Assembly (NCBI GenBank): GCA_044892505.1
Contig: CM097882.1
Location: forward strand, 25,482,001 to 25,546,000
Reading direction: 5' to 3'
Source: Schmidtea nova
Lineage: Eukaryota
Length of the DNA stretch: 64,000 nucleotides
Shown: positions 23,901-57,614 of the stretch, piece by piece
How positions within the stretch are numbered: the stretch's first letter is position 1
How the letters are laid out: each line of letters opens with the position of its first letter
Translations under genes and position numbers: made by a program
Notes under the pieces: generated by a model
Told to the model about the DNA's origin: nothing
Seen by the model: only the letters and a program-made list of their open reading frames with translations
Database searches by the model: none

Positions 23901-26900
23901 GCAATATAAGCTGATATAAAAATATTTTTAATATTATTTTTTTATTCATATAAACATCCTTTAGAAGTTTTATCAATTTTTTTTTGCTTTTTTAAGTTTG
24001 TTTCTTATTTTTATTATTACTGATCTTTATATAGAGTGTTCGGGATAAATTTGACATTTTTATAATTGATTTATAATAAAATTGATTTATATTTATAATC
24101 AACCCACACTACTCATCATTTAAAAGTTTGGACCCTTCTTCATTCATATACAAGATGTCAGAGAGGATAGATAACAGGAACCCACATGAATCGTGGAAGA
24201 GAATAACTTGCATCATGATGATTCGTGCCGTCCATCAAAATAGGGATATTATGACAACTGCCCAATGCTCCCTGAACACAGTAAAAACAATCAGGCATGA
24301 ACTAGAAACTTGCAATAGTGACTATGAGGCTGTAGCAAGAAGAAAGATCCATAACAGACGATCTGATTGCGTTCGTACAGCAGAATTCCTCAAAGATCTG
24401 CAGGAAAAGGTGTTGAAGAACCCTGGCATTGGAATTCGGGCTTTGTCACGTGAAATGAATGTTTCATCTTTCACTATGAAGCTTGCACTCAATAAAGACC
24501 TTCGCTACTACTCATACAAGCGCCGCAAAGGTCAGCTGCTCACAGAAAGGGCCCGTGAAAATCGTTTGATAAACGTGAAGAAACTTCTGAGCAAAGTGAA
24601 ACATCCTGCTGAACCACAAACAATCTGGTTCTTTTCCGATGAGAAAAACTTTTGCCAGGATCAAAAACACCACACCCAGAATAATAGATGCCTTGCATTT
24701 AGTCCCAAGGACAATCCTCGTGAAATGCAGGCTAAATTTCCCCAAACTGTGATGGTTTTCGGATGTGTGCCCTTTGAGGGTGATGTAATGCCTTTTACAG
24801 AGGGCCTCAGGTTGAATTCAGATGGCTACGTGGATTTGCTAAAAACTATAGTCAAGCCCTGGATAACAAAAGTAGTCAATAGTAGGCCGTATGAATGGTA
24901 GCAAGATTCGGCCCCTTGCCACACCTCATGGAAAAGTCATAAATGGTTGTCTGAAAATTTTTACGACTTCACCAGTCCAAATGTTTGGCCTCCTAACTCC
25001 CCAGACCTTAACCCTATGGATTATTTTGTATGGGGCGCTGTTGAAAAAGACACCAATTGTTGTGCCAGTAATACAAAAGCCCAGTTAATGGATAAAATTA
25101 AGGGTGTTTTTGATGCCCTTCCCATGGAGACTGTAGCATCAGCTTGTTCCAGGTTCCGAAGCAGGATTGAAGCTGTGATAGATGCTAATGGTGGTTATTT
25201 TGAGTGAAACTTGTTGATAGTATTGTAATTTCTGTTCCTGTTATTTTTTTTCAATTCATTAAATTTAGCAGTTACAAAGAAGATTTCCTTTTTACTTACG
25301 AAATTGTCAAATTTATCCCAAACACCCTGTATACGGATATTACAAGAACTGTTAATTATTGTCAATTTANNNNNNNNNNNNNNNNNNNNNNNNNNNNNNN
25401 NNNNNNNNNNNNNNNNNNNNNNNNNNNNNNNNNNNNNNNNNNNNNNNNNNNNNNNNNNNNNNNNNNNNNNNNNNNNNNNNNNNNNNNNNNNNNNNNNNNN
25501 NNNNNNNNNNNNNNNNNNNNNNNNNNNNNNNNNNNATTAAAAGATAGCAAAATAATCCTTTGCTGCGAAATATGTTTTATTAATCGAAAATTTTCGATTT
25601 TAATACTTTTCTTTAAGAATTGAAGAGGATTATTATATAATCGAAAATTTTCCATTAATAAAACATATTTCGCAGCAAAGGATTATTTTACTATCTATTA
25701 ATTTATTTATTAATTAATGNNNNNNNNNNNNNNNNNNNNNNNNNNNNNNNNNNNNNNNNNNNNNNNNNNNNNNNNNNNNNNNNNNNNNNNNNNNNNNNNN
25801 NNNNNNNNNNNNNNNNNNNNNNNNNNNNNNNNNNNNNNNNNNNNNNNNNNNNNNNNNNNNNNNNNNNNNNNNNNNNNNNNNNNNNNNNNNNNNNNNNNNN
25901 NNNNNNNNNNNNNNNNNNNNNNNNNNNNNNNNNNNNNNNNNNNNNNNNNNNNNNNNNNNNNNNNNNNNNNNNNNNNNNNNNNNNNNNNNNNNNNNNNNNN
26001 NNNNNNNNNNNNNNNNNNNNNNNNNNNNNNNNNNNNNNNNNNNNNNNNNNNNNNNNNNNNNNNNNNNNNNNNNNNAATAATAATATTATCATTATTTATT
26101 ATTATTAATTATTATAATAATTAATATTACCATAATCAAATTATCATTTGGCTTCACCTTTGATCTTTTTGCCTAATTCGATAATTTTCATTAATTTTTC
26201 AATTTTTTTGGTTGTTATGTCCACAATATTTCGGCACAGCCTTTATCAAATGTGTATTTATTTGATAAAGAATGTGCCGAAATATCGTGTACCTAACAAC
26301 CAAAAAATATTTTTATCTATAATACAATAATGCAATGATTTCCCTAGCAGATATGCATAATTATGAATAATAAGTCATTAAAAATGAATAGAAAAGAGAA
26401 ATTAACCAGATTATTTCCAAAACTGACCGAATCTGGTAAAAAAGTACTGAATTCCTGCAATAAATCTTGTTCATTATCAAACAGTTTTGCGACTTCTTGT
26501 GAAACCTCAGTTTCTGTTTGCTTTCGTTTGACTAAGTCGGGATTTTTTTGTTCTTTTTGATACCAATGCAATATTTCCAGAAACCTTTTGTAGACATCTG
26601 GCTGCTTTTGAAATCGATTCTAAAATCCAAATGTAATTAAATCCTAGTTGAAAAATCAATAAACTGATAAACTTTGATTTTATTAACATATTCAACTGCG
26701 TGATTGAATTCACTTGGGGTTTGAGATTGAGGAATACCGGGAGAAATAGATTTGAGTCCAATAATCGAGTTTCCTTTAATTAAGAATATAATTGAACGAA
26801 AATTATTTTCAGAAATAATTACATTCATTATATACTTTGAATAATTGAATAAAGTGAAAATAATGTTGGATTATCAAATAGAGGAAATTCAAAGATAAAG

Positions 26901-29900
26901 AATTATCTTTCATTTTTAATATAAAAATGTATTGTTTAATTATTGTTTAAATTTTCGTTTACATTATTGTAAGTTGTAAATATTGGGTTTATGTATGTGT
27001 TTTAGAAATTGACTGTCTCAAACTGTTTTCGTGTGTTATTAAATTAATATATTCAAAGCAATGTCGAGGAGTATTTAAACAAAAACTGTTGAAATATCTG
27101 AAATTCTAAATCAATTTTGTGATCTTTCTAAATTTGAAAGAAATTTAAGTGAAGAGAAATTATTGGTATTTGAAATAATATCGATTTTAATTACGCAGTT
27201 TTATGGATTTTGGATAAATTTAAAAAGACAATTTTTGTAAAAATTACACAGCGATCACTTTATGTTTGGAAAATAATTTTAAGAAGAATTGGTATTCAAT
27301 AGGATTTTATTTAATCAAACAATATCATTCCATATGGATTTTGTAGTTCTAAATCTAGCCGCAAAATGTAAGGAGAATTAGTGGCATGTTTCGGGATAAA
27401 TAAATCCAAGTATTTAATTGATAAATATTCAGAACTTGCATTAAAAGAATCTGATGAGCTACAATAATGTGATTACTAATGTCGAGAATTTAAAATCTCT
27501 GGAAGCTTGGATAAAATGTTTCCAGTAAATTATCAAACGGTGTGTGAATTTATAAAAGTTGGTGATGATGAATGGAAAATCATTCAAATACAATGGATAG
27601 ACAAATTGAATAGCTGAAGCAATATAATGAAATTTCCACGAAAAAAAGTAATCTTCAAATCTGCAAGTCTATCAATATTCAGCAGAATTCAAATTTAAAA
27701 GATTTTGGAAGTGTGATCTGGGTCAAAATAGCAATATGTCGATATCGTATTCAATATATTGAAAATAAAAGCTCATAAATCCGTCTAGCAAGTTGTGAAA
27801 TTATTTAATTTTCTCCAATTTAACCAATATTGTTAAATATATCATATAAAATGAAATATATATTTACATAAGCACTTTGAAGAATAAAATTGATATTTTG
27901 AAACTTGACGTTGTTTTTTTACTTATAAAGGAAGTAAAGTACACCTATAAAAGTACATATTTAAATAATAATTAATTTTAATTAAATAATAATTAATTTC
28001 TTTATTTAATTATTCCTATATAACAAACACCGACAAATTATTCGACCCGTAGACTAATAAAGACGTTTTTAATGCATATTTTCAGACTAAAAGTACACAG
28101 TTGGCAACTTTAGTAATATTCGGGACTAAATATCTGGCTTTATTTATTTGGAATAAAGGATTTGAATTGAATATAAATTAAAAATTTATGCAAATATAAT
28201 CGTGTTGAAGTTTGGCTCGTGAAAATTTGATTTTAATGGTCAAATACATTAGCCTTGTGATTCCCAAAGTGGGGCGCACGCCCACGTGGTGGCAAATTGA
28301 AGCTTTTTTAAAAACCAAATCAATGGCCTTCTAGACTACACGTGAATAAGAGTTCACTTTCACATAGCCAAAAACCGTTGGTAACGCTACATAAACAAAA
28401 ATTTATGGAACAAGTAAAGAATAATGAACGGAAGAATAACAATTGTAGCAAAATATTCCTAAATAGTGCAAATGTAACGAATATTGTTTTCGATGAGTTT
28501 CATTTTTCGTAAGACTTTAGATCAAAGCAATTCTATTATTAAGTACACGATATTTCGGCACAGCCTTTATCAAATACGTAATTGATAAAGGATTGTGTTG
28601 AAATATCGTGTACCTTATACAAAAATTGTTTTGATCTAGTCTTATAAAAATTAATATGAAATTTATTTAATTAAAAAAGATTTAGTTAATGAACTACCAT
28701 CACTTACCCAAAACAGTGTTGGGCGCTTATTTTCAGCGATGTATTATATCAAATCTGGCCTACATGCTAATTTGAAAGAATATTGTTTTTTGAGAACCAA
28801 CTCTTATGTGAGATCAACATATCTTTAAAAACTTAATGGAGTCCTTCCGTAATTTACGAGAAAAATTATTTTTATTAAATATTTTTAACTATAAATACAA
28901 TGTTAAGGTCTGAAATTAAATATGCGCTTTGTTTAGTTATTATTCCTTTATAAAATGTTTAAAAATGTTATAAATAAAGTCAACTTTTTCAGTTTTCATT
29001 ACTTTATTTTTATGTATATTTGGCATATTGTGTAACCAAACTATGCATTATGTATTGTCAGTCTTGAATGTCATTAAAAATTTACATTATATTTGAGAAA
29101 AAAGTTTCTTCCACATTTCTACTTTCAACAAGACCTTTCTTGATTGATTAAAGAGTAACTTATTCGGTGTCTTAAATATTCTCGATGAGAAAACTTCAAC
29201 ACTATCTGTCTACTTAAATTGATGGTATTAAACTAACGCTAATCGGGAAAAACGTTAAAAGTGTAGTTAATTGACGAGAGAATCTTGTGGGTTACACAGC
29301 CTGAATTCCATCAAAAAAAAGATACAGGTGAGAATAAATCAAAAAGAAAAGAAACCAGTGGAAAATTTTTAATTAACCACACTGTTTCGTTTAATTTTAT
29401 CATTAGATCGCAATTGGTAAATTTAATTTTAATTACTATTTTATATCCTTTTTTCAATTAAATAACTCAAATTTACTATCCATTTCCGTTAAATAATGTT
29501 TAATTGATTATTTAATATTTATAGCGTTATTAAAGTTAATAACACAATTTATTAGAAATAAAACTAAAACCTTACCGGATTGAATAACAGGAATCTGATT
29601 GATATCCGATCGATCTGTTTCCACCACTATATTGACATTTTCATGTGACAAATCACTGTCAATGGAAACTTCAATTGGAGGATTGACAATGGAATTAGGA
29701 TAAATAGAATAAGGTTGACTATTTACAATTGTAGAGGTATTATTGATATTAATTGATGTCGGGTGGATATTCTCGGGATAATTGGTCAAGAATGGTGTTT
29801 GATAGGCACTCATTTGATAGCCCGGTGGTAGAAATGTATTAAATCCTTCAATCAGATCTTGATGTCCATGAAATAGAGTTAAAACATTTTGAATTACTGT

Positions 29901-30187
29901 TTCTGTGTTTATTCTAAAACTCACAAATTGTTTAATTATATTTACAGTTTGATTTGGACACGAATTCAATACTTTTGAGCTTTGAAATCTTTCATAACTT
30001 CGAGAAATTTTTTATAGATTTCCTCATTAAATCTTCCTTTAACTCGATCGATATATTTCAAAGCATCTTCTACTTTTAGCTTTCCTGAGTTTTCTGCAGT
30101 GGTTTGGATGTTGTAGTTTGGATTTCCACTCGTCATTGTACTGTGATAACTTGGAAAATGGGAATGATCAGTGCCTGGATTAGACAT
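8903..30187 (-). CDS. SIN3: SIN3 transcriptional co-repressor (PAH1-3, HDAC-interaction domain, Sin3 C-terminal region), ~1198 aa, 13 coding exons
   Basis: Exons (minus): 30187-29973, 29913-29576, 26773-26673, 26619-26407 (alternative donor 26428), 22981-22289, 19230-18988, 18920-18643, 15548-15290, 12909-12535, 12474-12302, 12244-12099, 9518-9242, 9188-8903. All introns are GT-AG with compatible phases; total 3597 nt. Motifs: [14 protein letters not shown]...[13 protein letters not shown] (PAH1), [31 protein letters not shown] (PAH2), [39 protein letters not shown]. Confidence 0.93.
9950..10830 (+). pseudogene. Degenerate mariner transposase in SIN3 intron 11
   Basis: [58 protein letters not shown], with stops. 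Confidence 0.82.
11455..12040. repeat. ~78-bp AT-rich tandem array split by a ~200-bp foldback insertion
   Basis: aaagtgcaatataatgtgattt recurs at ~11466, 11543, 11621, 11905 and 11984. Confidence 0.85.
11671..11832. repeat. Foldback: perfect 44-bp inverted repeat with 74-nt spacer containing a hammerhead-like motif
   Basis: 11671-11714 is the exact reverse complement of 11789-11832. Confidence 0.9.
13525..13557 (+). ncRNA. Hammerhead-like motif (U3:A8 variant), representative of a dispersed ~150-bp repeat family
   Basis: ACAC-TTGATAA-A-GGC(TGT)GCC-GAAA-TA-TT-GTGT. Other copies at 11734-11766(-), 26222-26254(-), 26258-26292(+), 28543-28577(-) and 28580-28613(+). Confidence 0.45.
14400..14760 (-). 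mobile_element. Penelope-like retroelement relic (GIY-YIG endonuclease, 3' end of ORF)
   Basis: [40 protein letters not shown]...[16 protein letters not shown] matches the PLE VY...C..C...Y.G.T.R.L..R..EH / EALYI...P.LN.Q pattern; one internal stop. Confidence 0.78.
16960..17290 (-). pseudogene. Degenerate hAT transposase related to the element at 1078-3861
   Basis: [12 protein letters not shown]...[18 protein letters not shown]...[13 protein letters not shown] aligns by eye to SFDEWTSSRNRRYL...FWNLGLARVVGSLPAEKC...[13 protein letters not shown]. Confidence 0.75.
17870..18630. repeat. ~85-97-bp tandem array (about 8 copies) in SIN3 intron 7
   Basis: Recurring aaaagagaattagatcaatattagcactttatcaata...tataggtaaacagtacaaatat. 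Confidence 0.9.
19506..19777. mobile_element. hAT-type MITE (272 bp)
   Basis: TIRs CAGAGGTGCTCAAA / TTTGAGCACCCCTG; flanking 8-mers CTATATAC / CTGTATAC (7/8 match). Confidence 0.8.
20330..21260 (+). pseudogene. Degenerate hAT transposase (C-terminal half)
   Basis: [51 protein letters not shown]...[11 protein letters not shown], with stops. Confidence 0.8.
21430..22080. repeat. Almost pure A/T tandem array (~85-bp unit, degenerating)
   Basis: Repeated ttcaaaattcatggtaaaaataaataaatcctaataat blocks. Confidence 0.8.
24032..25329 (+). mobile_element. maT-family (DD37D) Tc1/mariner element, 1298 bp
   Basis: TIRs (T/C)AG(A/G)GTGTT(C/T)GGGATAAATTTGACA flanked by TA. Transposase FFSDEKNF...W*QDSAP...SPDLNPMD has exactly 37 residues between the 2nd and 3rd Asp. 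Confidence 0.9.
24128..25207 (+). pseudogene. maT transposase with one premature TAG (24899-24901)
   Basis: ORFs 24128-24901 and 24947-25207 are in the same frame, separated by one stop in the expected W-Q-Q-D motif. Confidence 0.85.
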
Positions 30188-30917
30188 GTGTTGTAATGAC
30201 TACACATAAAATTAAATTCTAAAATTCGAATAAAAGAAAGAAATAAACATAAAAAATACATTTAATTAAATTTGTGTTAAAGATTTACAAGATTTTTCAA
30301 AAATTATAATCTATAAATTAAAAATGGGTATTTATTTATATTACATTTTAAAACAAATTGACAACAGAGTGCCAATTATTGTTTTGGAATTTTTAATAAT
30401 TTTTATAATAAATTTTTAAATGCTTAAACATTTAATTACAAATTATTATTTAGTATTTAATTAAGGATTATTTTAATAAAAATTTATTTATAAATTAACA
30501 TAAAAATATAATGATTTTGTTCATTATATATAAGCTGCTAATGTCCGGTATTAAAAATAAAATACTTTATAATTATGTTGGTGTATATGTTGTTAAAATT
30601 AATTGTTTTTTATAGCCCTTAAAACCCTTGAAACCCTCATGACTTTTTACGATGATCTCACACTTGTATCCATAATTACTTTTCGGTAATTATGTTATTA
30701 AATAGTAGATTGCTGTAAGGTTTCTGACCTTGGATTAGTATGGTAATAAATGTTGTCGGCAATCATCAGATAGTACTCTATAGACTCCTCAATCATTATC
30801 CCACATTATATATCCGTGAACGTATGACTGGGCACGTTCACATTTGTACAGCATATATGTGGTCGATAGTTTACTTTAGCAATGAGATAGATTGATGAAC
30901 TTTGTACCCACACCTAT

Positions 30918-31055
30918 TGGTGGGTTGTTGATCGTCAATATTACCTTGACGTTGCTATGGTTCACATCAACAACTCAACACATAAAACATTTAAATAACC
31001 ATCTTGTTGCCCGTCACAATGTAACGTTGGTAATGCAACAAATTGGTGGGTATTC
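30918..31055 (-). mobile_element. Terminal 138 bp of an older related LTR (left piece)
   Basis: Begins TGGTGGGTTGTTGATCGTC like the young LTR; diverged duplicate of 31060-31200; continues at 50412. Confidence 0.85.
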
Positions 31056-31059
31056 GTAA

Positions 31060-34000
31060 TGGTGGGTTGTTGATCGTCAATATGACCTTGACGTTGCTAT
31101 GGCTCCCATCAACAACTCAACACATAAAACATTTAAACTACCATCTTGTTACCCGTCACTATGTAACGTTGGTACTGTAACAAGTGGGTGGGTATTCGCA
31201 ATCAGTGAGCGTCGTCAATACGAAACTATGATTGACCGAATATCTCCTGGGTCCAAGGGCTACCGATAGAAGGTTTATTGCCCGTTTTGTCCCTTCTTCG
31301 ACGATTTATCTATAAGCATTCAACAAAATTTTCATCGGAAATTCAACATAAACACTCTACATAACTATAAATTCATTAATACATCCAAATAAATTCTTCC
31401 GAGCATCAAAAACACTAATATACCCCTATATTTTACCAATATTGCATTTTATGATAATTAATACATAAAATATTATATTTTTATAGAAAAATTTTAATCT
31501 GCATTTGAAATTTAAGAAAAATTTTAATTATTACCGTAATTTTATCGAGTTTAGAAAGAATAAAAAATAAAATTTCCGTTTGTTTAAAATTGCTAATTTA
31601 ATCAAAAGGACAAATTTACTCAATTTAAAATTTATATTAATTTTAAATGTAATTTTATGAATTTTTCGCTAAATTGATAAATTAACTATTTCTATAGTTC
31701 AGATCCACAAGAAATGGACCTTTCCAGAAACTACGAAGCCAGAGGAAAATTCTCCCACCCCAAACGGGTCAATCCGATTAGAACTCGAGCTCCTATGAAG
31801 CAAAATAGCCCGCTCTACCAACCAAGTAAAATTTTGATTATTTCAGAATTATAATTTATTTTGAACAATTTTAGAAAATTTCTTGAAGAGAATAAGTTAG
31901 AACTGGTCCTTCAAGCATTGGAAACCGGAGAAAAATCCTTGCCGGGGACTCTTATCCCTCAAACTGAATTTTTATCAATAAATCTTTAAATAAAAATTTT
32001 TCCGTCTTTACTCTTTTTCGTTTGAGTTCTTATTATTTTTATGAGATTTTTGTAAATTAAAAATAAACTGTAATGTAAATGGCCTATTTGGCTGGGTAAA
32101 TTCAATTTTATATGGTAGGTTTGAATGATAGAAATTTTTGTATGGTTTTTCTGGATGTATGTTGCCGACTAACATAACTGTGTAGAATTTTCAGTATTGT
32201 TTGCTTGTGTGTATATAACTATTGAATGCTAATAAATGATACTGTGTATGTGTGTATATTGTATTTTAAATATATGTTGCTTGTGTATTAGTATGGGAAA
32301 TGTTATTGAATGAAATGGATGTATTTTTTTGCAATTAGGGATGCATTGCGATTTTTGAGATATCGTGGGGGTATTTATAATATACTATATATATAAATTA
32401 TATAAAATAATTTTAAAATTAAAATAATAATAATAATTTTTATAATACTTTTTATAAATTTACGAAAATAATACAATAATAAAATTTCCAATTTTTATAT
32501 TATAAATTTTTATAATACTTTTTATAAACTTTAAATTTATAATTTTGTAAAATAAAATTTCTAATTTTTACAATACACATTTTTTATAATAATTTTTATA
32601 AATTTTTAATTTATAGTTTTATGAATATAATAATAAAATTTATAATTTTTATAATATACACTTATATAATACTTTTTATAAATTTCTAATTTATAATTTT
32701 ATGAAAGTAATATAATAATAAAATTTCTAATTTTTATAATATAAATTTTATAATACTTTTTATAAATTTTAGTTTTATAATTTTATGGAAATAATACAAT
32801 AATAAAATTCCTAATTTTTATATTATAAATTTTTATAATGCTTTTTATAAGTTTAATAATATAATAATACCATTTCTAATTTTTATAATATGAATTTTTA
32901 TAGTCGAATTTTTATATTTTAAGTATATATATATAGTAAAAAATTTTCCTATAGAATTTTGAAATTTTGGATTTTCTGAAATGATAAAATTTTCATTATG
33001 ATAATAATATTTTTGATTTAAAAAATTTTTATGGGTTTCAAAGATAAATTTTGATTTATAAATCCTTAGGAATTTTATAAAATAACAAAATCTTTTATAT
33101 CATAACAATATTCGGAGAATTTTGGTTCACCATTTTTCATTATAAAAATTTTTCCAATATAATAAAAAGTAAATTTTTATTTTTTGATCGAAACGAAATT
33201 CACATGATAATAAATTTTTCATCCATAAATTTCGAAATCTAAATAAGCATTTAATCTAAAAAATTTTTATATGCTAAATAAAAATAAAATAAAAATAAGT
33301 TATAAATTTTTCAACGAAAAAATTTTTTCGACATCGAATAAAGTTAATTTCGGTTTCATTATTATTCCATCGGATTTGAGCATTAATTCGAACGATTTAC
33401 TTTTTCATATCGGTTTTTAATATTCTGGATCTTGGATGAGAAGAAAATTATTGTGAAGGTGAAGGCGAAGGACGAGTAAAATGTTTTTGCATAATTATTT
33501 TTCCTAATGGAAAAGACATTGTTGGAGAGATTTGTCTTTACGTTTTCATGTGGTATTACTTTTCAATATATTAAAATTTATAAATTCGGATAAGTTACAT
33601 TTATTATAAATAAATATCATTAATATAACACCTTGCCTTGGGCCAAGCCACTGTTCCCCAGTTGGGATGAAGTGATCTTGGATGGTTAGGCTATTCACCT
33701 GACTCGGAAAAATGGACTGATCGATTTACGTATCGAACCAGCGATCCGCTCAGGCTACTTCCACCCGATCGGCACAAGGCCAGACACAGGCTTCAGGGGG
33801 TATGGAAAAAAAAAATTTTTGTTTTATTTAGATACTTTTATCATTTATTAAGATAATATTGCGAATTTAATTCTCGGAGATTTTGTGACAAAATCAAAAA
33901 CAAAAAAAAAAAAATTATTAGTAAATATTCTAATATTCATTCAATAATACAAAAATATCATAGCAATAATAATATAAAATTATAAAAATATTACCGGTAC

Positions 34001-34780
34001 GGGGTAATCGAACAGGCATGGTGTTCCATGACCCCGCGCCAACAAAAGAATAGGACTTACGAAATCAAAATTTACAAGCTTCAAAAAATTTCACAAAATT
34101 CTTGACAGAAAAAATTTTTTCACAAATTCTGCACAAATTCTGAATAGATTCCATTTTGATGGCGGTATATATACCGTCGATTTTCGTCACCTTCACCAGT
34201 GTAATAAAACAAATTGTTCTAGAATTTTCGATTTAATTTTTCTAAATTAATTCTAATGATTTTCCGAAAATTAAATCCATATTTTTGTGTAACAATTTTT
34301 TACAAAACACAAATAATTTATTTTAATCCAAAATTTTTATTTTTGAATCGAAATTTGTTCGATTTAATTTAATTTACGATATTTCAATCAATATTAATTC
34401 TTTTTATTGTTAATGTGAAATATTTTGCTAAAATCACAATTTTCGGCTAAAATTCTGTTAATTCTTTCTGCATGAAGGTTTTATAACACAATTCCGCTGT
34501 TTATGGGTATTTTCAATGGGTTTTCCGCCTTATTCTAACTTTTAAACGTTCTTCTTTTGATGGTATTTGATTTTTCTCGAGGTTTCCATGTAAGGGCTTT
34601 CAGACTCACAGCTAGCGCGTTCTCTACTGGTTGATGTGTTGTGAGTTCACTTCACCTTTTGTTGTTTTTCACTTAATTGCTTGGATTTTTAATGGGTTTT
34701 TGGGTTAAAACTGAATCTTGCGCGCTCTCTACCTATGGGGTTATCGTTTGTTTAAAACAATTTGTGGTTTTTGCCCAACA
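31060..34780 (-). repeat. 3' LTR (3721 bp)
   Basis: Direct repeat of 46689-50407. Spot checks found only a 2-bp indel (~32179) and one substitution (~32323). Confidence 0.95.
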
Positions 34781-35021
34781 TAAAATACTCGGGGGCCCGC
34801 AAAAATTGCGTCCCGCAATTTCTCAGAGGGGTTAAGAACCAAGATTAATCAAAGGTCAAAAGGTTGTACATTATACACGAGCTACTTGGTCGTGATCATG
34901 CCATTTGCGACAATAAAAATAAAAAGTGATAAAAATTAATAAAAAGTTAATACGTATACACTAATATGAGTCTACATCGACTCGCAAGCAAAAAAAAAAT
35001 TTAAATATAATGTAATATATG

Positions 35022-35141
35022 TGCCTACAGCGGCTAATCAAAGTTCAATATGAGTCTACAACGACTCGGATAAAAGTTTTATGCCTACAGCGGCTAATCA
35101 AAGTTCAATATGAGTCTACAACGACTCGGATAAAGGTTTTA
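35022..35141. repeat. Two 60-bp tandem copies (plus a partial copy at ~34963) in the element's 3' UTR
   Basis: tgcctacagcggctaatcaaagttcaatatgagtctacaacgactcggataaa present twice. Confidence 0.9.
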
Positions 35142-36110
35142 TAAAGTTCAGTTAAATTGTTTATATTCTGGAACTTGACGAATAGTATTGTATTGGTTGT
35201 TCTATTGTAAATTGAGGATTTGTTTCTCGTTTTCTGGGTCGTCTTGGGGATTGTTCCGGTTTGGTTGACATAGTTGACAATTCATTGGATAATAGCACGG
35301 AGCGATTATAAGGTGATTGAATATGCTCCGTAATTTTTCTCAGTTCGGTCTTGATTTGGATCATATAATTCGGGTTTTCGGATGTGACCGCTCGTAGTTC
35401 ATCATTTGACTTTGTCCATTCTTTCATAGATTATCTGATCTCGATTCATTGGACGATTTATTAAGGTAATTGTTCTGGAATTTGATTGATCGTATGTGGG
35501 GATTTTGGTTCTTGCTTCAAAGGTTTGATTTTTCTCTTGATTGGAGCTTTGTTTTAAGATTTTGGTGGCTTCTTTTTCGCATTATTGCTTTTAATTGTTT
35601 CTTTCAAATTTTTCTTGATTTAACTTAGGTTTCTGCTTCAGTAGTTAAATTAGTATCTTTTCCTTTCCACTTTTCTGGTTTGGATTGTTTTGATTTCATT
35701 GGCTTTCTGATTTGTCTGGTCTTGATGTTTGATAATTTTTGTTGATGTTCGGTCTTTTTATTCTCTATTTTTTCTGATTTACTCAAATATTTTTCTGGCT
35801 TTCCGATTAATTCATTTTTTAATGGCAACTTTTCTGCGAACAAGCTTGACTTTGACTTTAAATGATCTCTTTAATTTATTTCGACCAGTTTTTGTTTTTG
35901 TTTTTGTTTTTATCATTTTTATCATTTTTATCATTTTCTAATTTTTATTTGGTTTTCATTTTTTTCTAATTTTTATTGAATTTTTATTTTTTCTGCTTTT
36001 TATTTAATTTTTTGGATATATATTTTTTCTTTTTACATTTCTTTACAACATTTTCTTTTTACGCTTTACATTTCAATTTCTTTTTACACTTTACCTTTCT
36101 CTTTTATTAT

Positions 36111-37658
36111 TCATACAAACGTCTCTTCAATTTCTCCGAACCCTTCATCTTCAATTCGAGGATTTTCTTGCTCCAATAGTACAGGTTGTATTGGTGTTGG
36201 ATATAGTGGCCATAGAATGATTGGAGGTTGATTTTGTAGGCTCTGAACTCTCTCTCGCAAAGTTCTTGAGATTTTCATCTCTTCATCTAGCAAATATGTC
36301 ATATAATCGAGTTCTTCACTCAGCTGTTCCTTTTCTATCTCGAGCTCTCTCGTATTTTCCATATTTTTCAACCTTTCAATCTCTCTTTCATAGTTTTGGC
36401 GGTTTTCTTCCAAACTTTGGATAGCCATTTCAATCTCATACTGCGATTGCTGGATCGCTTTCTCACATTCGGCCTTTGTTTCTTCTATCTGCCGTCGCTG
36501 GTGTTGAATGACAATGTCTTTATGAGTATTTGTACCTCGATATCCATTGACTTCACGGTTTGCAATAGTCAATTCGATTGTCAATTCTTCAATACTTCTA
36601 TCATCCATATTTTTCTGTTGATCATATTGCCTGTTTTCAAATTCCAGATATTTGATACGAGCTTCTTGATTCCTGGTAAATTTCATTCTCCTTTGATTCC
36701 ATTCGGTTTTTAATTGAATTTGCCGTCTTAATTCTTTGTTTTCTATCTCTTGCTTTTCTGCATTTTCCCACAATTCTGCTTCATTTATTGACATCAGCTT
36801 CTTTGGGAATTCTCGTAGTTCGTCTCGGGTTCTTTTCCAGGTCTTTTTCCATGTTCTGGCTTGTTCTATTAGCCACTTTATTTGATGCTTTATACTTCTT
36901 TCTCTGAACTGTCCGCTCGTTTTCAACTGGAATATTTCTTTTCTGAGTTTCTCCGTTTCCTCATGACGTATGTCTGCATACCAATGACATTCCTCTTTCA
37001 GAGCCTCGATTTGAACGTCTCTCCGTCTTAGTAATTCTTCCTGTAGCATTTTTCTGTGTCGAGCCATTTCCAATAAATCTTGGTGTTCTTGTTTCCATTT
37101 CCTAGCCTCTGCTTTAACTTTTCTAATGATCTTTTCTTGTTCGCTTTCAGGCTCAATGTTTCTTGTTCTGACTTTAAGCTTCTTTTGAGGTTGTCCTCTC
37201 AAAACAAATGCTTCATCTCGACACTTTTCCCATTTCTTTTTCATGGCTTCATATCTGTTCCTTTCACTTTCGAGTTGCTGCTGATAGAATCTTATGGAGT
37301 TGTCATATCTTGTTTCGGTATCTCTTTTATAGGTTTCGAGCTCATCTTTTCTTAATCTCGCTTGATTTTTCAACGGTACCGACTTTCGTTGTTCGTGCTC
37401 GAGTTTTCTCTCCATTTCCCTGTACTCTCGTTTATAATTTTCTAGTTCAGCTTCGATATGCGCTTTATCGTTTATTATCTTTCGCAGTTCCTCGTTTTCC
37501 TCTTTTATTTTGTTGATCTCTTGGGTTCGTTTTTCAATTATTCTGACGTTTTCTTGGATGGCTTCCATTCTTTGTTCATAGCTTTTCATTTGACTTAGTT
37601 GCTCTTGTCTTTTTGCCATCTCCTGATCTAGGATGTCTATCAATTGTTGTATATTCAT
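36111..37658 (-). CDS. 515-aa coiled-coil protein of the LTR element, function unknown
   Basis: Long uninterrupted ORF in very AT-rich DNA, E/K/R/Q-rich heptad pattern, Pro-rich C-terminus, splice acceptor TATTTCAG 1 nt before the ATG. Confidence 0.8.
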   Translation of the reverse strand: MNIQQLIDILDQEMAKRQEQLSQMKSYEQRMEAIQENVRIIEKRTQEINKIKEENEELRKIINDKAHIEAELENYKREYREMERKLEHEQRKSVPLKNQARLRKDELETYKRDTETRYDNSIRFYQQQLESERNRYEAMKKKWEKCRDEAFVLRGQPQKKLKVRTRNIEPESEQEKIIRKVKAEARKWKQEHQDLLEMARHRKMLQEELLRRRDVQIEALKEECHWYADIRHEETEKLRKEIFQLKTSGQFRERSIKHQIKWLIEQARTWKKTWKRTRDELREFPKKLMSINEAELWENAEKQEIENKELRRQIQLKTEWNQRRMKFTRNQEARIKYLEFENRQYDQQKNMDDRSIEELTIELTIANREVNGYRGTNTHKDIVIQHQRRQIEETKAECEKAIQQSQYEIEMAIQSLEENRQNYEREIERLKNMENTRELEIEKEQLSEELDYMTYLLDEEMKISRTLRERVQSLQNQPPIILWPLYPTPIQPVLLEQENPRIEDEGFGEIEETFV

Positions 37659-49600: not shown

Positions 49601-50407
49601 ATAAAATTATAAAAATATTACCGGTACGGGGTAATCGAACAGGCATGGTGTTCCATGACCCCGCGCCAACAAAAGAATAGGACTTACGAAATCAAAATTT
49701 ACAAGCTTCAAAAAATTTCACAAAATTCTTGACAGAAAAAATTTTTTCACAAATTCTGCACAAATTCTGAATAGATTCCATTTTGATGGCGGTATATATA
49801 CCGTCGATTTTCGTCACCTTCACCAGTGTAATAAAACAAATTGTTCTAGAATTTTCGATTTAATTTTTCTAAATTAATTCTAATGATTTTCCGAAAATTA
49901 AATCCATATTTTTGTGTAACAATTTTTTACAAAACACAAATAATTTATTTTAATCCAAAATTTTTATTTTTGAATCGAAATTTGTTCGATTTAATTTAAT
50001 TTACGATATTTCAATCAATATTAATTCTTTTTATTGTTAATGTGAAATATTTTGCTAAAATCACAATTTTCGGCTAAAATTCTGTTAATTCTTTCTGCAT
50101 GAAGGTTTTATAACACAATTCCGCTGTTTATGGGTATTTTCAATGGGTTTTCCGCCTTATTCTAACTTTTAAACGTTCTTCTTTTGATGGTATTTGATTT
50201 TTCTCGAGGTTTCCATGTAAGGGCTTTCAGACTCACAGCTAGCGCGTTCTCTACTGGTTGATGTGTTGTGAGTTCACTTCACCTTTTGTTGTTTTTCACT
50301 TAATTGCTTGGATTTTTAATGGGTTTTTGGGTTAAAACTGAATCTTGCGCGCTCTCTACCTATGGGGTTATCGTTTGTTTAAAACAATTTGTGGTTTTTG
50401 CCCAACA
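46689..50407 (-). repeat. 5' LTR (3719 bp)
   Basis: Direct repeat of 31060-34780, flanked internally by the PBS and externally by TSD GTAA. Confidence 0.95.
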
Positions 50408-50411
50408 GTAA

Positions 50412-53400
50412 TCAGTGAGCGTCGAAAATTCGAAACTATGATTGACCGAATATCTCCTGGGCCCAAGGGCTACCGATAGAAGGTTTAATGTCCATTTTGT
50501 CCCTCCTTCGACAATTTAACTGCAGATATCTAGTTTACATTAGCAAAATGAAATAATTTCATCGATAAAAATTTTGTTAATTTGTCCCAATCAATCATCA
50601 TACGCGGTATTGTCTCAAAACACAGGAGTTTTCGCGCATTCATTTTTTTCGCAAGCTCATGTTCAAACATATTATCGCAAACTCAATTCAGGGACCTAAA
50701 TCTCAACCAAACAACATATATTTTCGGGGATATTTGATCGCAATTATTTTAGTCTAAAAAATTATTAATTTAAAATTTTTCGATTTCTGTATTTTTCCCA
50801 TTTATCAAAAATCCAATTAAAGATTTTTAATCCCCTATACCTAGTGTCTATCTTGCTTTATATTTGTGATTTAAATTTTAATTAAAAATTTAACATCATA
50901 GCTTTTAAATTTTTGCCGCGGCCTTGACAACGGCAACGGTTACAGCTATTGTTAAAAAGGAAAACTTGGGTTTTTTAAACCTTAAAATTTTCCTGTAGAT
51001 AAAAGTGAGGAGATAGGGTATTTAATTTTAAACTACAAAATTAGGTTATTCCCAGCTCCTTTACCCCTCGAAACGGCAAATTTCGGTTTTAAATTTAAAC
51101 TATATAAGTGAATATCAAGATTAAACGATTTTCATTCGACGAATTCACTTTATACAACTTTTATCAATATAATGAGTATTGATTTCAGATTTATATTGGA
51201 GAATTCGATTTTACCTCGTGTAGGGATTCTATCTGGTAATTTATATTTATTTTCTTTCGAATTTATTTTTATATTTATTATTAAGGACTCACGCCTGTTT
51301 CGAAAATGTCTCATGATGCAAATATTTCGCAAGGGATTAGACTACAACAAAATTTACGGAAGACTATTTCATCAAATTCTTAAAGATGGAAAATTGTATC
51401 TTTCCGACTGATTTTCAAACCACTGGGAGATTTTCTCATTCCCTCGTCGTGGAATTCTACTAGAATGAGGATTCTCCTCTCATGGAATTCATTTATGCTA
51501 ACTGGAGTTTTCGCTCTTCATTTCGATCCACTGAACAAACAGTGGATCTGTTATCCATGGGAAAATTTGAATTTTCAAACGACTACAATTTTTTAAAGTG
51601 AAATATATGTTTTTCTGATTTTCAATTATTGTTGATGATGTGGATTTTTCCGATTTATGAATTAAAGCACCGATGGGAAATGTTAACGATAAAAATTTTT
51701 TAGGAGGGTACTGATAGAGTTTCAATAAAGAATAGGGTGTGTTGGAAAATTTTTGGTGAAGAATAAGTTTGGATTTCTACAACAGATAATTTTTCAAGGA
51801 ATACAAATTTAAAATTCAGATACCTCTGGGTGACTGTTGAAATTTTATGTGGGAATTACGATCTTGAGGAAATTAATGAAACTGTTTTAGATTACGACTT
51901 CCCTAAACTGAGATTACATGATCTCAATCTGTTGGTTTCATAAATCATTTTTTAAAGGGTATAATTGGACATAGAGTGTATTATTGATGGTATTAACAGC
52001 TTCCTGATAACTATAGCTGATTATATTTCTGTATGGGATCTTTGGGTGTAGCTTGCGGTATCTAAGATGTGGATGACTGAAGTAATGTGATTTGAATGTA
52101 TGCACGGTGGAATGAATGATCGTAGGTGACTGTATGTTGGATCGAATGTTGTATGAAATAGGAAATTCAATGATTGATGAGATGAAGTGATTTGTATGAA
52201 TGTATGGATTTTCATGTAGATTGTTGATTGCAAGTTTGTGTGTATGTACACTATTGTAAATTTAAGATGAATGTCCTATTGTTGTGAACGTAGGTGATGG
52301 TGTGTTGGGTGAAATAAGTAATGATGGATGTGAATACTTGTACAAATTCTGGATGTATGATGCAAACAACTGTCGTTAAATGAAACAATGTTGTGTATGT
52401 TGGTGAATGGATGTAGTGGCTATTGTAGGGTCTAGTATAGGAGATCTTATTGATTGAAATGTGGTAGTATGTGTATTGTATTTAACTAAATGTTGCATGC
52501 GGTATTGTATGGATGGTGTTAACGAGTGTGATGTATGTATTGTTTTGCAAATATGGATGTATTATGATTTTGTGATATCGTGGGGGGGGTATTTTATAAA
52601 AAACTATATATTTGTATATAAAATATTTTTAGGAGTAAAATAATAATAATAATAATTTTACAATTCCTTTTACAAAATTCCAAATTTACAATTTTATAAA
52701 AGTTATTTAATAATAAAATTTCAAATTTTTATAATATAAATTTTTGAATTCAAATTTTTATATTCTAAAGATATACATATATATTAATTGTAAATTTCCC
52801 TACGAAATTTCAATTTTAGAATTTTATAAAATAATAAAAATTAATAATAATAAATTTTTTGGCTTATAATTTTCATGTATTCCAATATAAGGTTTGATAT
52901 AAGAATTTCTAGGAAAAAATTTTGATTTATAATTTTTATATTATAATTTTTACACAACATAGTATTTTTATTTTTATAACCGAATCTAAAAATTCTATAA
53001 GATTTATACAATAATAAAAAATTTTTATTCGCAAATTCAACAATCTAAATATTTCAATAAATAAAAGAATTTATATTAAATTATCTTTAAAAAATAAATT
53101 ATAAATTTTTAAAAAATTATTTCCAATCATATATGAACTTCTGAAATAAAATATATATAAAATTCGAGACGGTTCTCTTGGCGATCTCTGCACCTCTTAG
53201 AAGTTTTTACCAATGATGTTTACGGTTTGGTAAATATTCAATGAACTATTATCGAGCATAATCAGTAAGCATTATTTTAATATAACATTTTTGCTATTCT
53301 TCGAGTGGTCATTTATGATCCTTTATACATTTGACTTTCCGATCGATATTGCAAATTCTTTCCTAATGAAGTAAAGACGACGTTTATGGAGCGAAGACGA

Positions 53401-54795
53401 ATAACGAGCTGTGTGTTTTATACTAATAAGTTTGATGGAAATAAAGATAACACTGGACGAATTGACGTTGATTTTCATCAAGATATAAAATCTTAATTTA
53501 CTGTATGTTGTAAAATATAATTCAAATAAAAATACATTAATATAAATTGGTGATCATTAATATGAAAAACCTTGCCCTTGGCCAAGCAACTGTTCCCCAG
53601 TTGGGATGAAGTGATCATGGATGTTTGGGCGTATCACCCGAAGTCGGAAAAATGGACTGATCAATTAAGAATCGAACAGCGATCCTCTCAGGCTACTTTC
53701 AGCCGTACGGCTCAAGGCCTGAACGGATGTCAGAGGGTATGGAAGAGGTTTTAATGAAATACATAAATATATATATGATAAATAACAATAACATGATATT
53801 AGTAACTGAGAAAATGCGACGAAATTTAATAAAAGTTTAAATATAAAAATTATAATTTTCATAAAAGAAACATAAAATATCATATAGTACACATAGATTA
53901 AGGTTAAAATAAGGAAAAATACCTAGGCCGGGTAGCGAGTGCATGATTTTGTGGGCCTTTATAATTTGGAAACAAAATCAAGTTTCTTACGAATAATTCG
54001 ATTCACGACCACAAATAATCTTCTTTCGTAATATTCTGGTAGAGTCACACTCGTATACTAGTAGTAAGAGATTTTTGTTAAAATTTCCCTGCTAAAAAGC
54101 TCAAAATTTTTAGCAACAAAATTCCTCCACAAATCCTTTGCAAAATAGCATTAAATGTCTCCATTTTGATGGCGGTATTTTAATATAAAATTTTCTGCAT
54201 TTTTAATTCCATTGAGGTATTAAAACAAATCGTTCTAGAAGGAGTTTTTAATTTTCTTGAAATTAATTTCAACAATTTTCCGCAAAACTAAATTAATAAT
54301 TTTACATCAAATTTTCATAAAACTTTAAATAATTTCTTTTTAATCCAAAATTTTACTTTTGAATTAAAGTTTATTCTAATTTGATTTAATTTGTTGTAAT
54401 TTCGATCAAAATCATTTTCTTTTATATTTTTACGAATTTTTAAGATAAAATCGTAATCTTCCTTCTGCAAACATGCTAAATTTCCACAACCGAGGTTTCA
54501 TATCATGAATGCGTTCTCCACGTGCATATTCGCTGTGTTTTTGTCTATTCTAGCTTTTTAGACTTGCTTTTTTTAACCATTTTGATTTTTCCTTGATGTT
54601 TTGATTAAAGGACTTTAAATTAGAATCTTGCGCGCTCTCTACTTGTTAATGCACTTTGGTCCACTTTAATATTTAGGTGTGTTTTCACTTAACTACTACG
54701 ATTTTACTCTATGCTTAGGTTAAATTAGAATCTTGCGCGCTCTCTACTTGTTGTGTTACCGATTCATTTAAACGATTTGCAGTTTTTGCCCAACA
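50412..54795 (-). mobile_element. Remainder of the older, diverged LTR of the same family (~4.5 kb in total with 30918-31055)
   Basis: Resumes TCAGTGAGCGTCG...gggcccaagggctaccgatagaagg exactly where the left piece stops. Homologous blocks at ~52470-52620, 53570-53750, 54160-54200 and 54620-54795; ends CCCAACA. Confidence 0.85.
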
Positions 54796-56169
54796 CAACC
54801 AATACCGCAACACAAATGTTGTCTACTTCACCCATGTACCCATAGTTACTCCTCGGTAAGTTTTGTTGGTAATGTACACGGTGACGAGAATCCAGTGAGC
54901 AGGTGAGCTTCGTTGCCGAAACTACTCCTCAATGTATCCTCTTTTTCGGGTTCTCGTTGCCAATAGAAGGTCTTAAGCGTCTAACTACTCTCTATTTCCT
55001 TAGGTCCTCAAATTCTATATCCCCGCGCTATTTTATTACCACCAAAATCACTACCTCTTTATCCTAAAACAATTCTAATAACACTCCGAAATAGCAATTT
55101 TTCCCCTCGCCGTATTATATAATTTAATAATACAACGGTCCGGAGGAACCAATCATTCGGCCCAAACAGCTCCTAACCATCGAAGTCATCGGGACTGGTG
55201 AGTCAACCGAGGTTCTCCTATATTCAGCTTAATTGGGACAAATCAATTTGAACAAAGCAAATTTATCGTTAAAATAAAATATTTATAATTGATTAAAATT
55301 TACAAAAATGCAGTTACAAATGAAGCATGATAATTACAACAAACTCTAAAAGAATACACAAAAAACATACTTGTTACTGATGTACCACACAATCCAATAG
55401 AAAATTACTAACTGGTGCTGGCTGGCAGAATTGAAAATCGTGAATTAACGCGCTACTCTGTTCAAAATGTACTCAAGTGTATCAAAAGTGATTCAAGCTC
55501 GTGTTAAATTATGATTTTTCAGGGTCTATTTACACTATTTTTTGTGTGACTCTTAGTCATTGTTCATTAAAACAAGAATGTTTAAAATTTAATTCATATA
55601 TTTAGTTTTATATTTAACTTATTTATTTTTATAAATGATTTATTTATTTATTTTCCTTAAATTTAATTTTATAATTTATTTTATTTATTCCTAAATATTT
55701 AATTTTAATTTTATTAAATAATGTGTGTATTCATATTTTAAGCGCGTTAATTGATTGATTAAAACAATCATATTTAATTTCAATTTAATTTCCATGCTTA
55801 TCTCCGTTATTTCTTTAAGATTTTTAATGGGGATTTTTTCTTTAATTTTTAATAAATTATTATCTTTATTTTGATACTAGTTTTATTCTTTGATCATACT
55901 TTTTATTACCAATAATTTCCCCTATTCAATTCTCGTGCGGTCTTTTGTATGTAAATTTGACCTACGCTCAAATTGTGTGCTCTCCTTTGAGATTTCTCTT
56001 TTCATCGTTTCTCCTTAACTCGACCGATTTATGGAAAGCGGTTCGTATGACTACTATTTATGCTTTCATATCCTATATTTTTCCTGCTATTTTCCAGTTT
56101 AATTTTCTTATGAGTTAACGTGTTAATTTAATTTTATTTTGATGTATTAAAACAAAATCTAGACTTTAA

Positions 56170-56345
56170 TTCTACCAGCCCAACAAAACATTAGTTGACC
56201 ATATTGTTGCTCGCTACAATGTAACGTTGGCACTGCAACAAATGGGTGGACATTCGTTAAATATGAGCGTCGAATAAATTGAAATTATAATTGAATGTCA
56301 CGGGGGGGTTCATTGGCGACTGATAGGAGGTATAATGTCAGTTTT
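56170..56345. mobile_element. Further diverged fragment of the same LTR terminus (a weaker match also at ~54860-54975)
   Basis: tacaatgtaacgttggcactgcaacaaatgggtggacattcg...tgagcgtcgaa resembles 31017-31055 joined to 50412 onward. Confidence 0.7.
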
Positions 56346-57580: not shown

Positions 57581-57614
57581 AGTATTGGCGTTTGTTTTTA
57601 ACTTATATCAGATA

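What the first reader, a model, noticed from the sequence alone, without database searches (positions are those of the whole stretch)
31060..50407. Very young giant LTR element with no visible pol that carries a ubiquitin-pathway-like cargo
Seen: 3.7-kb LTRs almost identical on spot checks, TG...CA ends, 4-bp TSD GTAA, a tRNA-Pro PBS, and ~11.9 kb of interior. The interior holds a RING ORF, a UBL-protease-ankyrin fusion and a coiled-coil ORF, with no RT (YxDD), RNase H, integrase or CCHC gag motif. Known: gypsy pol runs PR-RT-RH-IN, whereas here the protease is followed by ankyrins. Giant cargo-bearing gypsy elements (Burro) have been reported in the planarian Schmidtea (recalled from the literature, not checked), but those encode pol. 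Inference: a non-autonomous yet coding-intact satellite element, mobilised in trans, that encodes host-manipulating ubiquitin or apoptosis modules.
Basis: partly seen in the sequence, partly recalled or inferred. Interest (0 to 1): 0.9.

Follow-up and report, generated by a model that had tools for sequence, protein, structure and literature searches.

The report
Pol-less young giant LTR retroelement
A 19.3-kb LTR retroelement with almost identical 3.7-kb LTRs has recently inserted into an older LTR of its own kind; it keeps three long intact genes (an IAP-type RING protein, a protease-ankyrin protein and a coiled-coil protein) but shows no reverse transcriptase, integrase or gag in the readable sequence, so it most likely depends on a complete relative, and its gene set matches what is already reported for the giant planarian 'Burro' elements.

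Summary
The LTRs at 31060-34780 and 46689-50407 differ by one mismatch and one 2-nt indel. They end TG...CA and are flanked by a GTAA duplication. The two flanks are adjacent pieces of an older related LTR that overlap by exactly those 4 nt, which shows a real integration. The element lies on the minus strand, as do its primer-binding site (46661-46678) and all its ORFs.

The interior encodes a 160-aa protein with an IAP-type RING, a 1036-aa protein with a retropepsin followed by ankyrin repeats, and a 515-aa coiled-coil protein. The ubiquitin-like call in the 1036-aa protein is weak. No RT, RNase H, integrase, gag or CCHC signal was found in any open stretch of 45 codons or more on either strand.

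Both N gaps lie in non-coding leader. No sense-strand frame stays open for more than 35 codons at a gap edge.

The best reading is a non-autonomous derivative or relative of the Burro-type giant gypsy elements, whose published domain list already includes RING, SUMO-like, protease, ankyrin and Smc-like motifs. Homology to Burro could not be tested, because no relatives were retrievable. This is a new variant of a known kind, of moderate interest.

The parts
31056..31059 (.). Target-site duplication GTAA, left copy
   Evidence: The flank continues an older LTR up to this tetranucleotide.
31060..34780 (-). 3' LTR in the element's (minus) orientation; 3721 nt, with AT-rich 84/154-nt tandem repeats at about 32470-32854
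   Evidence: It differs from the other LTR by 1 mismatch and one 2-nt indel.
34781..36110 (-). 3' non-coding stretch with short tandem repeats; no canonical polypurine tract next to the LTR
36111..37658 (-). Intact 515-aa ORF, E/R/K/Q-rich (47%), coiled-coil-like, with no family hit
   Evidence: no PDB relative; composition.
38392..41502 (-). Intact 1036-aa ORF. It has a helical N-terminal part, a weak SUMO/ubiquitin-like signal (40642-40788), a retropepsin domain with DTGA (40213-40494), ankyrin repeats (about 39388-39792), an acidic low-complexity stretch and an unassigned C-terminal part.
   Evidence: RVP 25.4 bits (above cut-off), Asp_protease 25.6, Ank_2 E=3.7e-10, PF11976 16.3 bits (below cut-off); the nearest solved proteases are DDI1-type, E about 0.05; ankyrin hits only; structure models too poor to use.
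42261..42708 (.). Tandem array of a 26-nt unit (about 17 copies) in the 2.2-kb non-coding spacer between the RING ORF and the 1036-aa ORF
43748..44230 (-). Intact 160-aa ORF ending in an IAP-type C3HC4 RING (43754-43915); no BIR domain
   Evidence: zf-C3HC4_3, E=1.1e-13. BIRC3 RING E=2.3e-11, BIRC2 and XIAP next, with the match running to the C-terminus as in IAPs.
44231..46660 (-). Leader between the PBS and the first ORF. It is stop-rich in all sense frames and is interrupted by the two N gaps (45265-45423 and 46178-46527). The 754-nt island 45424-46177 is linked only by scaffolding.
46661..46678 (-). Primer-binding site: 18 nt beginning TGG on the minus strand, 10 nt downstream of the 5' LTR. 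It looks like the complement of a tRNA 3' end; the Pro assignment was not tested.
   Evidence: no tRNA gene in the window to compare with.
46689..50407 (-). 5' LTR in the element's orientation; 3719 nt
50408..50411 (.). Target-site duplication GTAA, right copy
30918..31059 (-). Left part of the older, related LTR that received the insertion (its positions 1-142; 92% identical to the young LTR here)
50408..54795 (-). Right part of the older LTR. It is 91% identical at first, then 69-82% in patches, with about 1.9 kb (50522-52466) unlike the young LTR. It ends with the same terminal motif.

Best explanation
This is a recently integrated, non-autonomous LTR retroelement, 19,348 bp long and minus-oriented. 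It belongs to, or is closely allied with, the giant Ty3/gypsy-like lineage known from dugesiid planarians as Burro/GYPSM1.

It retains the cis-acting parts needed for retrotransposition: LTRs with TG...CA ends and a tRNA-type PBS. It also retains part of that lineage's protein repertoire: an IAP-type RING protein, a protein that joins a retropepsin to ankyrin repeats, and a coiled-coil protein. It has lost gag with its zinc knuckles, RT, RNase H and integrase.

Shown: the integration is real, with a 4-bp duplication into an older LTR of the same kind. The LTRs are nearly identical. The three ORFs are intact. No polymerase, integrase or gag signal is present in the readable interior.

Inferred: its RNA is transcribed from the right-hand LTR. 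That RNA is reverse-transcribed from the PBS and integrated by enzymes supplied by a complete relative with compatible LTR ends. The retained protease processes the 1036-aa precursor. The RING, ankyrin and coiled-coil proteins act on host ubiquitin or cell-death pathways, or on the helper's particles. The long ORFs are intact because the source copy was under selection, or because the deletion derivative is very young.
For: - LTR pair with 1 mismatch and one 2-nt indel over 3.7 kb.
- GTAA duplication, and flanks that are contiguous pieces of an older LTR overlapping by exactly 4 nt.
- PBS, all ORFs and the A-rich strand are all on the minus strand.
- The protease lies in the middle of a gap-free 1036-aa ORF and is followed by ankyrin repeats, not RT.
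- From the 3' LTR to 45264 the sequence is continuous (10.5 kb) and has no RT, RH, IN, gag or CCHC signal.
- The gap edges are non-coding, and one gap abuts a microsatellite.
- The ORFs are far longer than chance allows.
- The published Burro domain list is Gag-CCHC, AIR1/RING, Smc, MATH, BIR, ankyrin, PF11976 SUMO-like, BCL2-like, env, PR, dUTPase, RT, RH and IN, with tandem repeats and accessory ORFs, in AT-rich planarian genomes (PMC6431247; PMC11410931). It includes every domain type seen here, down to the same weak Pfam family PF11976.
- The window is about 28% G+C and carries animal genes.
- Older LTRs and LTR fragments of the family lie in the same window.
Against: - No sequence relative of any of the three proteins could be retrieved, so kinship with Burro rests on domain types and host-like composition, not on homology.
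- The host species was not identified.
- The two halves of the element are joined only through two gaps, which lie where gag-pol normally sits.
- No autonomous partner with the same LTR ends or PBS was seen; the window has none.
- No clear polypurine tract is present.
- The PBS is 10 nt from the LTR, which is on the long side.
- Near-identity of LTRs in a gapped assembly can be inflated if reads from many copies were pooled.
Confidence: 0.58

Rival explanations
1. The element is complete. Gag and pol lie inside one of the two assembly gaps, whose true length would be several kb. The three ORFs seen would then be accessory genes downstream of pol.
For: The gaps lie between the PBS and the first ORF, which is the canonical gag-pol position. 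Their lengths are only estimates. The 754-nt island between them is attached by scaffolding alone. Accessory ORFs downstream of pol are known in this lineage.
Against: No sense-strand frame is open for more than 35 codons at any gap edge, so a gag-pol would have to begin and end wholly inside a gap. Gap 1 abuts a (TAA)n run, an ordinary cause of a short gap. All six gaps in the window have individually estimated lengths of 159-356 nt, not a fixed placeholder value. The only protease sits downstream, inside a continuous ORF, and is followed by ankyrins, so a hidden pol would be separated from its protease or would need a second one.
Confidence: 0.12
2. This is an unrelated LTR element, not Burro-derived, that trapped host gene fragments between its LTRs in the manner of a large retrotransposon derivative. 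The fragments would be a DDI1-like UBL-retropepsin gene, an IAP RING exon and an ankyrin gene.
For: The nearest solved relatives of the protease are DDI1 proteins, which pair a ubiquitin-like domain with a retropepsin. The best Pfam scores are tied between the DDI1-type family and retroviral families. The RING is about 45% identical to cellular IAP RINGs. Trapping of foreign DNA between LTRs is documented.
Against: The DDI1 matches are marginal (E about 0.05), and LTR-element proteases generally resemble DDI1. No UBA domain was found, and the UBL is sub-threshold. The ORFs are intron-free, strongly A-rich on the sense strand like the rest of the interior, and all co-oriented with the LTR transcript. 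The same combination of domains is already described inside Burro polyproteins. No host homologue was recovered.
Confidence: 0.18
3. This is an assembly artefact. The two LTRs, or the link between the two halves, were created by collapsing or mis-scaffolding reads from many copies of a high-copy family.
For: The assembly is gapped and the family is repetitive. The halves 26076-45264 and 46528-64000 are joined only by scaffolding. LTR identity may be a pooled-read effect.
Against: Each LTR is continuous with a unique junction. The two outer flanks are complementary parts of one older LTR with a clean 4-nt overlap, as expected of a single insertion and not of a chimera. The LTRs are not perfectly identical.
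Confidence: 0.05

Closest known systems
Burro / GYPSM1 giant Ty3/gypsy-like retroelements of dugesiid planarians (Grohme et al. 2018; Jurka 2007; reviewed in PMC6431247)
   Same: Both have multi-kb LTRs, internal tandem repeats and separate accessory ORFs in an AT-rich animal genome. The domain types overlap: RING, SUMO-like PF11976, retropepsin, ankyrin and Smc-like coiled coil, a set linked to ubiquitination and apoptosis control.
   Different: Burro elements are over 30 kb and encode one polyprotein of about 4,900 aa with Gag-CCHC, env-like, dUTPase, RT, RH and IN. This element is 19.3 kb with three separate ORFs. The readable sequence shows no gag, env, dUTPase, RT, RH, IN, BIR, MATH or BCL2 signal. 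Sequence homology to Burro was not testable here.
Large retrotransposon derivatives (LARDs; Kalendar et al. 2004, as cited in PMC6431247) and other non-autonomous LTR elements
   Same: LTRs and a PBS enclose a long interior without RT or IN. Mobilisation by a helper is presumed.
   Different: LARD interiors are non-coding. This interior keeps three long intact ORFs, including an apparently active-site-intact protease. At 11.9 kb it exceeds the roughly 10 kb said to be rarely passed.
Non-autonomous LTR elements that keep part of their coding capacity, such as barley BARE-2 (named from my own knowledge, not checked here)
   Same: These are helper-dependent elements that still express proteins of their own.
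   Different: In those cases the retained protein is Gag. Here no Gag is recognisable, and the retained proteins are a protease-ankyrin fusion, a RING protein and a coiled-coil protein.
DDI1 family (ubiquitin-like domain plus retropepsin domain)
   Same: The nearest solved structures to the protease domain are DDI1 retropepsins, and a weak ubiquitin/SUMO-like signal lies about 50 residues upstream.
   Different: The matches are marginal. There is no UBA domain, ankyrin repeats follow the protease, and the gene sits inside an LTR element.
IAP (BIRC) proteins
   Same: The C-terminal RING is of the IAP subtype and runs to the last residues of the protein (BIRC3 E=2.3e-11).
   Different: There is no BIR domain. 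The 105 residues upstream of the RING have no recognisable family.

Membership tests
LTR retrotransposon (structural definition) | Two direct long terminal repeats with TG...CA ends | tested here: met
LTR retrotransposon (structural definition) | Short target-site duplication created on integration | tested here: met
   4-nt GTAA; the older-LTR flanks overlap by exactly these 4 nt.
LTR retrotransposon (structural definition) | tRNA-complementary primer-binding site next to the 5' LTR | tested here: inconclusive
   An 18-nt TGG-initiated site at 46661-46678, 10 nt from the LTR, has the layout of a tRNA 3' end. The tRNA species (Pro) could not be checked, because no tRNA gene was at hand.
LTR retrotransposon (structural definition) | Polypurine tract next to the 3' LTR | tested here: not met
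   The 20-40 nt upstream of the 3' LTR on the sense strand are not purine-rich.
Ty3/gypsy (Metaviridae) | pol with the order PR-RT-RH-IN, and RT phylogeny | tested here: not met
   Only PR is present. No RT, RH or IN hit or motif was found in the readable interior. Placement in the superfamily therefore rests on inference.
Burro / GYPSM1 | Giant size (over 30 kb; interior up to 25 kb) | tested here: not met
   19.3 kb in total, with an 11.9-kb interior including the estimated gaps.
Burro / GYPSM1 | Gag with retrotrans_gag and CCHC knuckles at the N-terminus of a giant polyprotein | tested here: not met
   No gag hit and no CCHC motif in the readable sequence. The gaps were not read.
Burro / GYPSM1 | Accessory domains tied to ubiquitination and apoptosis (RING, BIR, ankyrin, MATH, SUMO-like, BCL2-like, Smc-like) | tested here: met
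   Met in part. IAP-type RING, ankyrin, coiled coil and a weak PF11976 signal are present; BIR, MATH and BCL2 are absent.
Burro / GYPSM1 | Sequence homology of LTRs or proteins to described Burro copies | not testable with these tools
   No Burro sequence is reachable. Protein and locus searches returned no relatives.
Burro / GYPSM1 | Host is a dugesiid planarian | tested here: inconclusive
   Animal genes and about 28% G+C fit the >70% A/T reported for Schmidtea, but the species was not identified.
LARD-type non-autonomous element | LTRs and PBS present; no RT or IN | tested here: met
   subject to the two gaps.
LARD-type non-autonomous element | Interior without protein-coding capacity | tested here: not met
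   Three intact ORFs of 160, 1036 and 515 aa.
DDI1-like proteins | N-terminal ubiquitin-like domain, central retropepsin and (often) a C-terminal UBA | tested here: inconclusive
   The retropepsin is met (RVP above cut-off; DDI1 structures are the nearest, E about 0.05). The UBL is sub-threshold and was not recovered by the PDB search or the structure model. No UBA was found.
IAP proteins | At least one BIR domain | tested here: not met
   Only the C-terminal RING is present.

The most novel reading that the evidence does not exclude
A 'satellite' retroelement has discarded gag, RT and integrase and yet is kept coding-intact by selection. Its protease-ankyrin, IAP-type RING and coiled-coil proteins would then be needed for its own spread. 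They might commandeer a helper element's particles or blunt host ubiquitin or cell-death defences. In that case the accessory module of Burro-type elements can persist and propagate on its own.
Probability: 0.25. Interest if true: 0.7.

Novelty: new variant of a known kind. Interest (0 to 1): 0.42.

Why it matters
Giant planarian retroelements are notable for carrying ubiquitin- and apoptosis-related domains whose role is unknown. This is a very young copy that has shed the replication enzymes but kept a subset of those extra genes intact. It would show which accessory genes the lineage keeps when the replication genes are gone. It also offers a compact, well-bounded example for studying their expression and distribution. 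If it turns out to be an ordinary deletion derivative among thousands of copies, it is mainly an annotation point. Either way, such elements should not be mistaken for host RING, ankyrin or DDI1-like genes.

Tried and rejected
- **Word-indexed protein searches.** Three searches (whole 1036-aa ORF, its residues 200-570, and the RING ORF) gave no hit.
- **Full HMMER search of 1.8 billion representatives.** The 1036-aa ORF returned only ankyrin-driven matches in the 150 listed, so nothing was learned about the protease or the flanking parts.
- **Exact-sequence look-ups.** The three element ORFs and the neighbouring hAT transposase were not on record, so neither other copies nor the host species were identified.
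- **Metagenome locus scan.** No relative was found.
- **Structure prediction.** Single-sequence models of residues 1-340 and 870-1036 of the long ORF had pLDDT of 50 and 40. They were too poor to use, so no fold search was run.
- **RNA and tRNA scans.** Rfam and ARAGORN found nothing in the window.
- **Self-comparison.** No other copy of the interior lies in the window, by DNA or by translation.
- **Literature.** The original Burro paper is not held, and the supplement with Burro probe sequences is not held.
- **Rejected ideas.** The plus orientation was rejected, because there is no TGG-initiated site after the left LTR and all ORFs are antisense to it. The 'ORFs' that the ORF listing shows across the gaps were rejected, because they are runs of X.
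Full report
**Observation**

A self-comparison of the window finds two direct repeats, 31060-34780 and 46689-50407. They are 3721 and 3719 nt long and differ by one mismatch and one 2-nt indel. Their ends read TG...CA on either strand. GTAA lies immediately outside both, at 31056-31059 and 50408-50411.

The flanks settle the matter. The 142 nt to the left (30918-31059) match the first 142 positions of the LTR itself at about 92%. The sequence to the right (from 50408) matches LTR positions 139 onward at about 91%. When the pieces are aligned separately to the LTR, they overlap by exactly the four bases GTAA (alignment A1). The element therefore integrated into an older LTR of a related subfamily and duplicated 4 bp. 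The older LTR runs on to 54795 with decreasing similarity. The match is not a chance tetranucleotide, and the LTR pair is not an assembly duplication.

**Gaps, tested first**

The window has six N runs of 159-356 nt. Two fall in the element, at 45265-45423 and 46178-46527. The 'ORFs' that the mechanical ORF list shows across them consist of X.

On the element's sense strand, every frame leaving either gap meets a stop within 47 nt. No frame entering a gap has been open for more than 105 nt. Nothing is in frame across the gaps, and the read sequence on all four edges is non-coding. A (TAA)n microsatellite abuts the first gap.

One caveat remains. The stretches 26076-45264 and 46528-64000 are each continuous, but they are joined only by scaffolding through a 754-nt island. 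What ties the two halves to one insertion is the complementary pair of older-LTR flanks.

**Orientation and cis elements**

All long ORFs lie on the minus strand, and the interior is strongly A-rich on that strand. On the minus strand the right-hand LTR is followed, after 10 nt, by an 18-nt site beginning TGG (46678 down to 46661). Its layout is that of the complement of a tRNA 3' end. No such site follows the left-hand LTR on the plus strand. The element is therefore minus-oriented, with its 5' LTR at 46689-50407.

I use no remembered sequence as evidence. A convincing polypurine tract is not present next to the 3' LTR, and this stays unexplained.

**Coding content, in sense order**

1. **RING ORF, 160 aa (44230..43748).** Its last 55 residues are an IAP-type RING: Pfam zf-C3HC4_3 E=1.1e-13, BIRC3 RING E=2.3e-11, then BIRC2 and XIAP. 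There is no BIR domain.
2. **Spacer, 2.2 kb.** It is non-coding and holds about 17 copies of a 26-nt unit.
3. **Long ORF, 1036 aa (41502..38392).**
   - It has a retropepsin domain at residues 337-430. RVP scores 25.4 bits, above its cut-off, and the DDI1-type and gag-protease families score the same. The single DTGA motif of the interior lies here.
   - Ankyrin repeats follow at about residues 571-705 (Ank_2 E=3.7e-10).
   - The nearest solved proteases are DDI1 retropepsins, at a marginal E of about 0.05.
   - The ubiquitin-like call rests on a sub-threshold hit to PF11976 at residues 239-287 (16.3 bits against 23.8). Neither the PDB sequence search nor the structure model supports it.
   - The N-terminal 230 residues are predicted helical at low confidence. 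The C-terminal 330 residues have no assignment.
4. **Coiled-coil ORF, 515 aa (37658..36111).** It is 47% E/R/K/Q and matches no family or solved structure.

The longest open frame is 1053 codons, against at most 143 in 200 shuffles. All three genes are intact, with no stops or frameshifts to count.

**What is absent**

Every stop-to-stop piece of 45 codons or more on the sense strand, and the ten longest on the antisense strand, were scanned against Pfam at lenient thresholds. None hit RT, RNase H, integrase, gag, env, dUTPase, BIR, MATH or BCL2.

Pattern searches found no CCHC knuckle, no HHCC integrase finger and no YxDD inside a real ORF. The protease sits inside a continuous, gap-free ORF and is followed by ankyrins, so the usual PR-RT-RH-IN string is interrupted in read sequence, not in a gap. 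Highly decayed remnants in pieces shorter than 45 codons cannot be excluded, but they would not restore autonomy.

**What it is**

The review PMC6431247 describes the giant gypsy-like Burro/GYPSM1 elements of Schmidtea and Dugesia/Girardia.

- Their LTRs are several kb long, and they have internal tandem repeats and accessory ORFs.
- Their polyprotein carries Gag-CCHC, AIR1/RING, Smc, MATH_TRAF_C, BIR, ankyrin, a SUMO-like PF11976 motif, BCL2-like and env-like regions, then PR, dUTPase, RT, RH and IN.
- Planarian genomes are over 70% A/T.

The window is about 28% G+C and carries animal genes: a serpin exon, Sin3-type PAH exons, a C1 domain and a hAT transposase. Every domain type found in this element is on the Burro list, including the same weak PF11976 family. 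The 'ubiquitin-pathway cargo' is therefore the known repertoire of a known lineage.

What is unusual is that a copy without gag and pol has kept a subset of that repertoire intact and has moved very recently. The closest general category is the non-autonomous LTR derivative (LARD). It differs from that category in being coding, and in having an interior longer than the roughly 10 kb said to be rarely exceeded.

**Limits**

I could not obtain any sequence relative. Three word-indexed protein searches gave nothing. The exhaustive HMMER search returned only ankyrin-driven matches. Four exact-sequence look-ups and one metagenome scan found nothing.

Membership in Burro is therefore a resemblance in architecture and domain content, not a demonstrated homology. 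The Ty3/gypsy membership test (pol order, RT) is formally not met. No helper element was seen in the window. The near-identity of the LTRs could be somewhat inflated by read pooling in a gapped assembly.

**Mechanism (committed view, confidence about 0.58)**

Shown: an LTR-element integration with a 4-bp duplication, a tRNA-type PBS, and intact ORFs without RT or IN.

Inferred:
- Transcription starts in the right-hand LTR.
- Priming at the PBS, reverse transcription and integration are carried out by enzymes of a complete relative that shares the LTR ends.
- The retained protease cuts the 1036-aa precursor.
- The RING, ankyrin and coiled-coil products act on ubiquitin or cell-death pathways or on helper particles.

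How three well-separated ORFs are translated from one transcript is unknown. Splicing or trans-splicing is a guess.

**Rivals**

- Gag-pol hidden in a gap: 0.12.
- Independent capture of host DDI1-, IAP- and ankyrin-like genes by an unrelated LTR element: 0.18.
- Assembly artefact: 0.05.

**Verdict**

The element is a new variant of a known kind, of moderate interest (0.42).

Noticed in passing
window 1602-3587 (+): An intact 661-aa ORF with a BED zinc finger and a hAT dimerisation domain. This looks like an apparently complete hAT DNA-transposon transposase.
   Followed up: partly
window 22274-22711 and 29508-29969 (-): Two ORF pieces with Sin3-type paired amphipathic helix repeats, probably exons of a host Sin3-like gene. 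It lies just downstream, in minus sense, of the insertion site.
   Followed up: no
window 56845-57348 (+) and 63113-63967 (+): A serpin-like exon and an ORF with a C1 (phorbol-ester/DAG-binding) domain. These are host genes that show the window is animal DNA.
   Followed up: no
window 30918-31059 and 50408-54795: The older LTR that received the insertion has non-matching 4-nt flanks (30914-30917 against 54796-54799) and a 1.9-kb stretch (50522-52466) unlike the young LTR. It is therefore not a simple solo LTR with a preserved duplication.
   Followed up: partly
window 21597-22101, 56198-56347, 60282-60615: Further fragments resemble the LTR, mostly its AT-rich 84/154-nt tandem-repeat region. 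They lie in both orientations, so the family or its repeats are dispersed locally.
   Followed up: no
window 34781-34830 (sense = minus): There is no purine-rich tract next to the 3' LTR. A short palindromic G+C-rich motif lies there instead, and how plus-strand priming would work is unexplained.
   Followed up: no
window 16118-16277, 23443-23730, 25370-25535, 25720-26075: Four more N gaps with individually estimated lengths lie outside the element. The ORFs that the ORF listing reports over them are artefacts of X translation.
   Followed up: no
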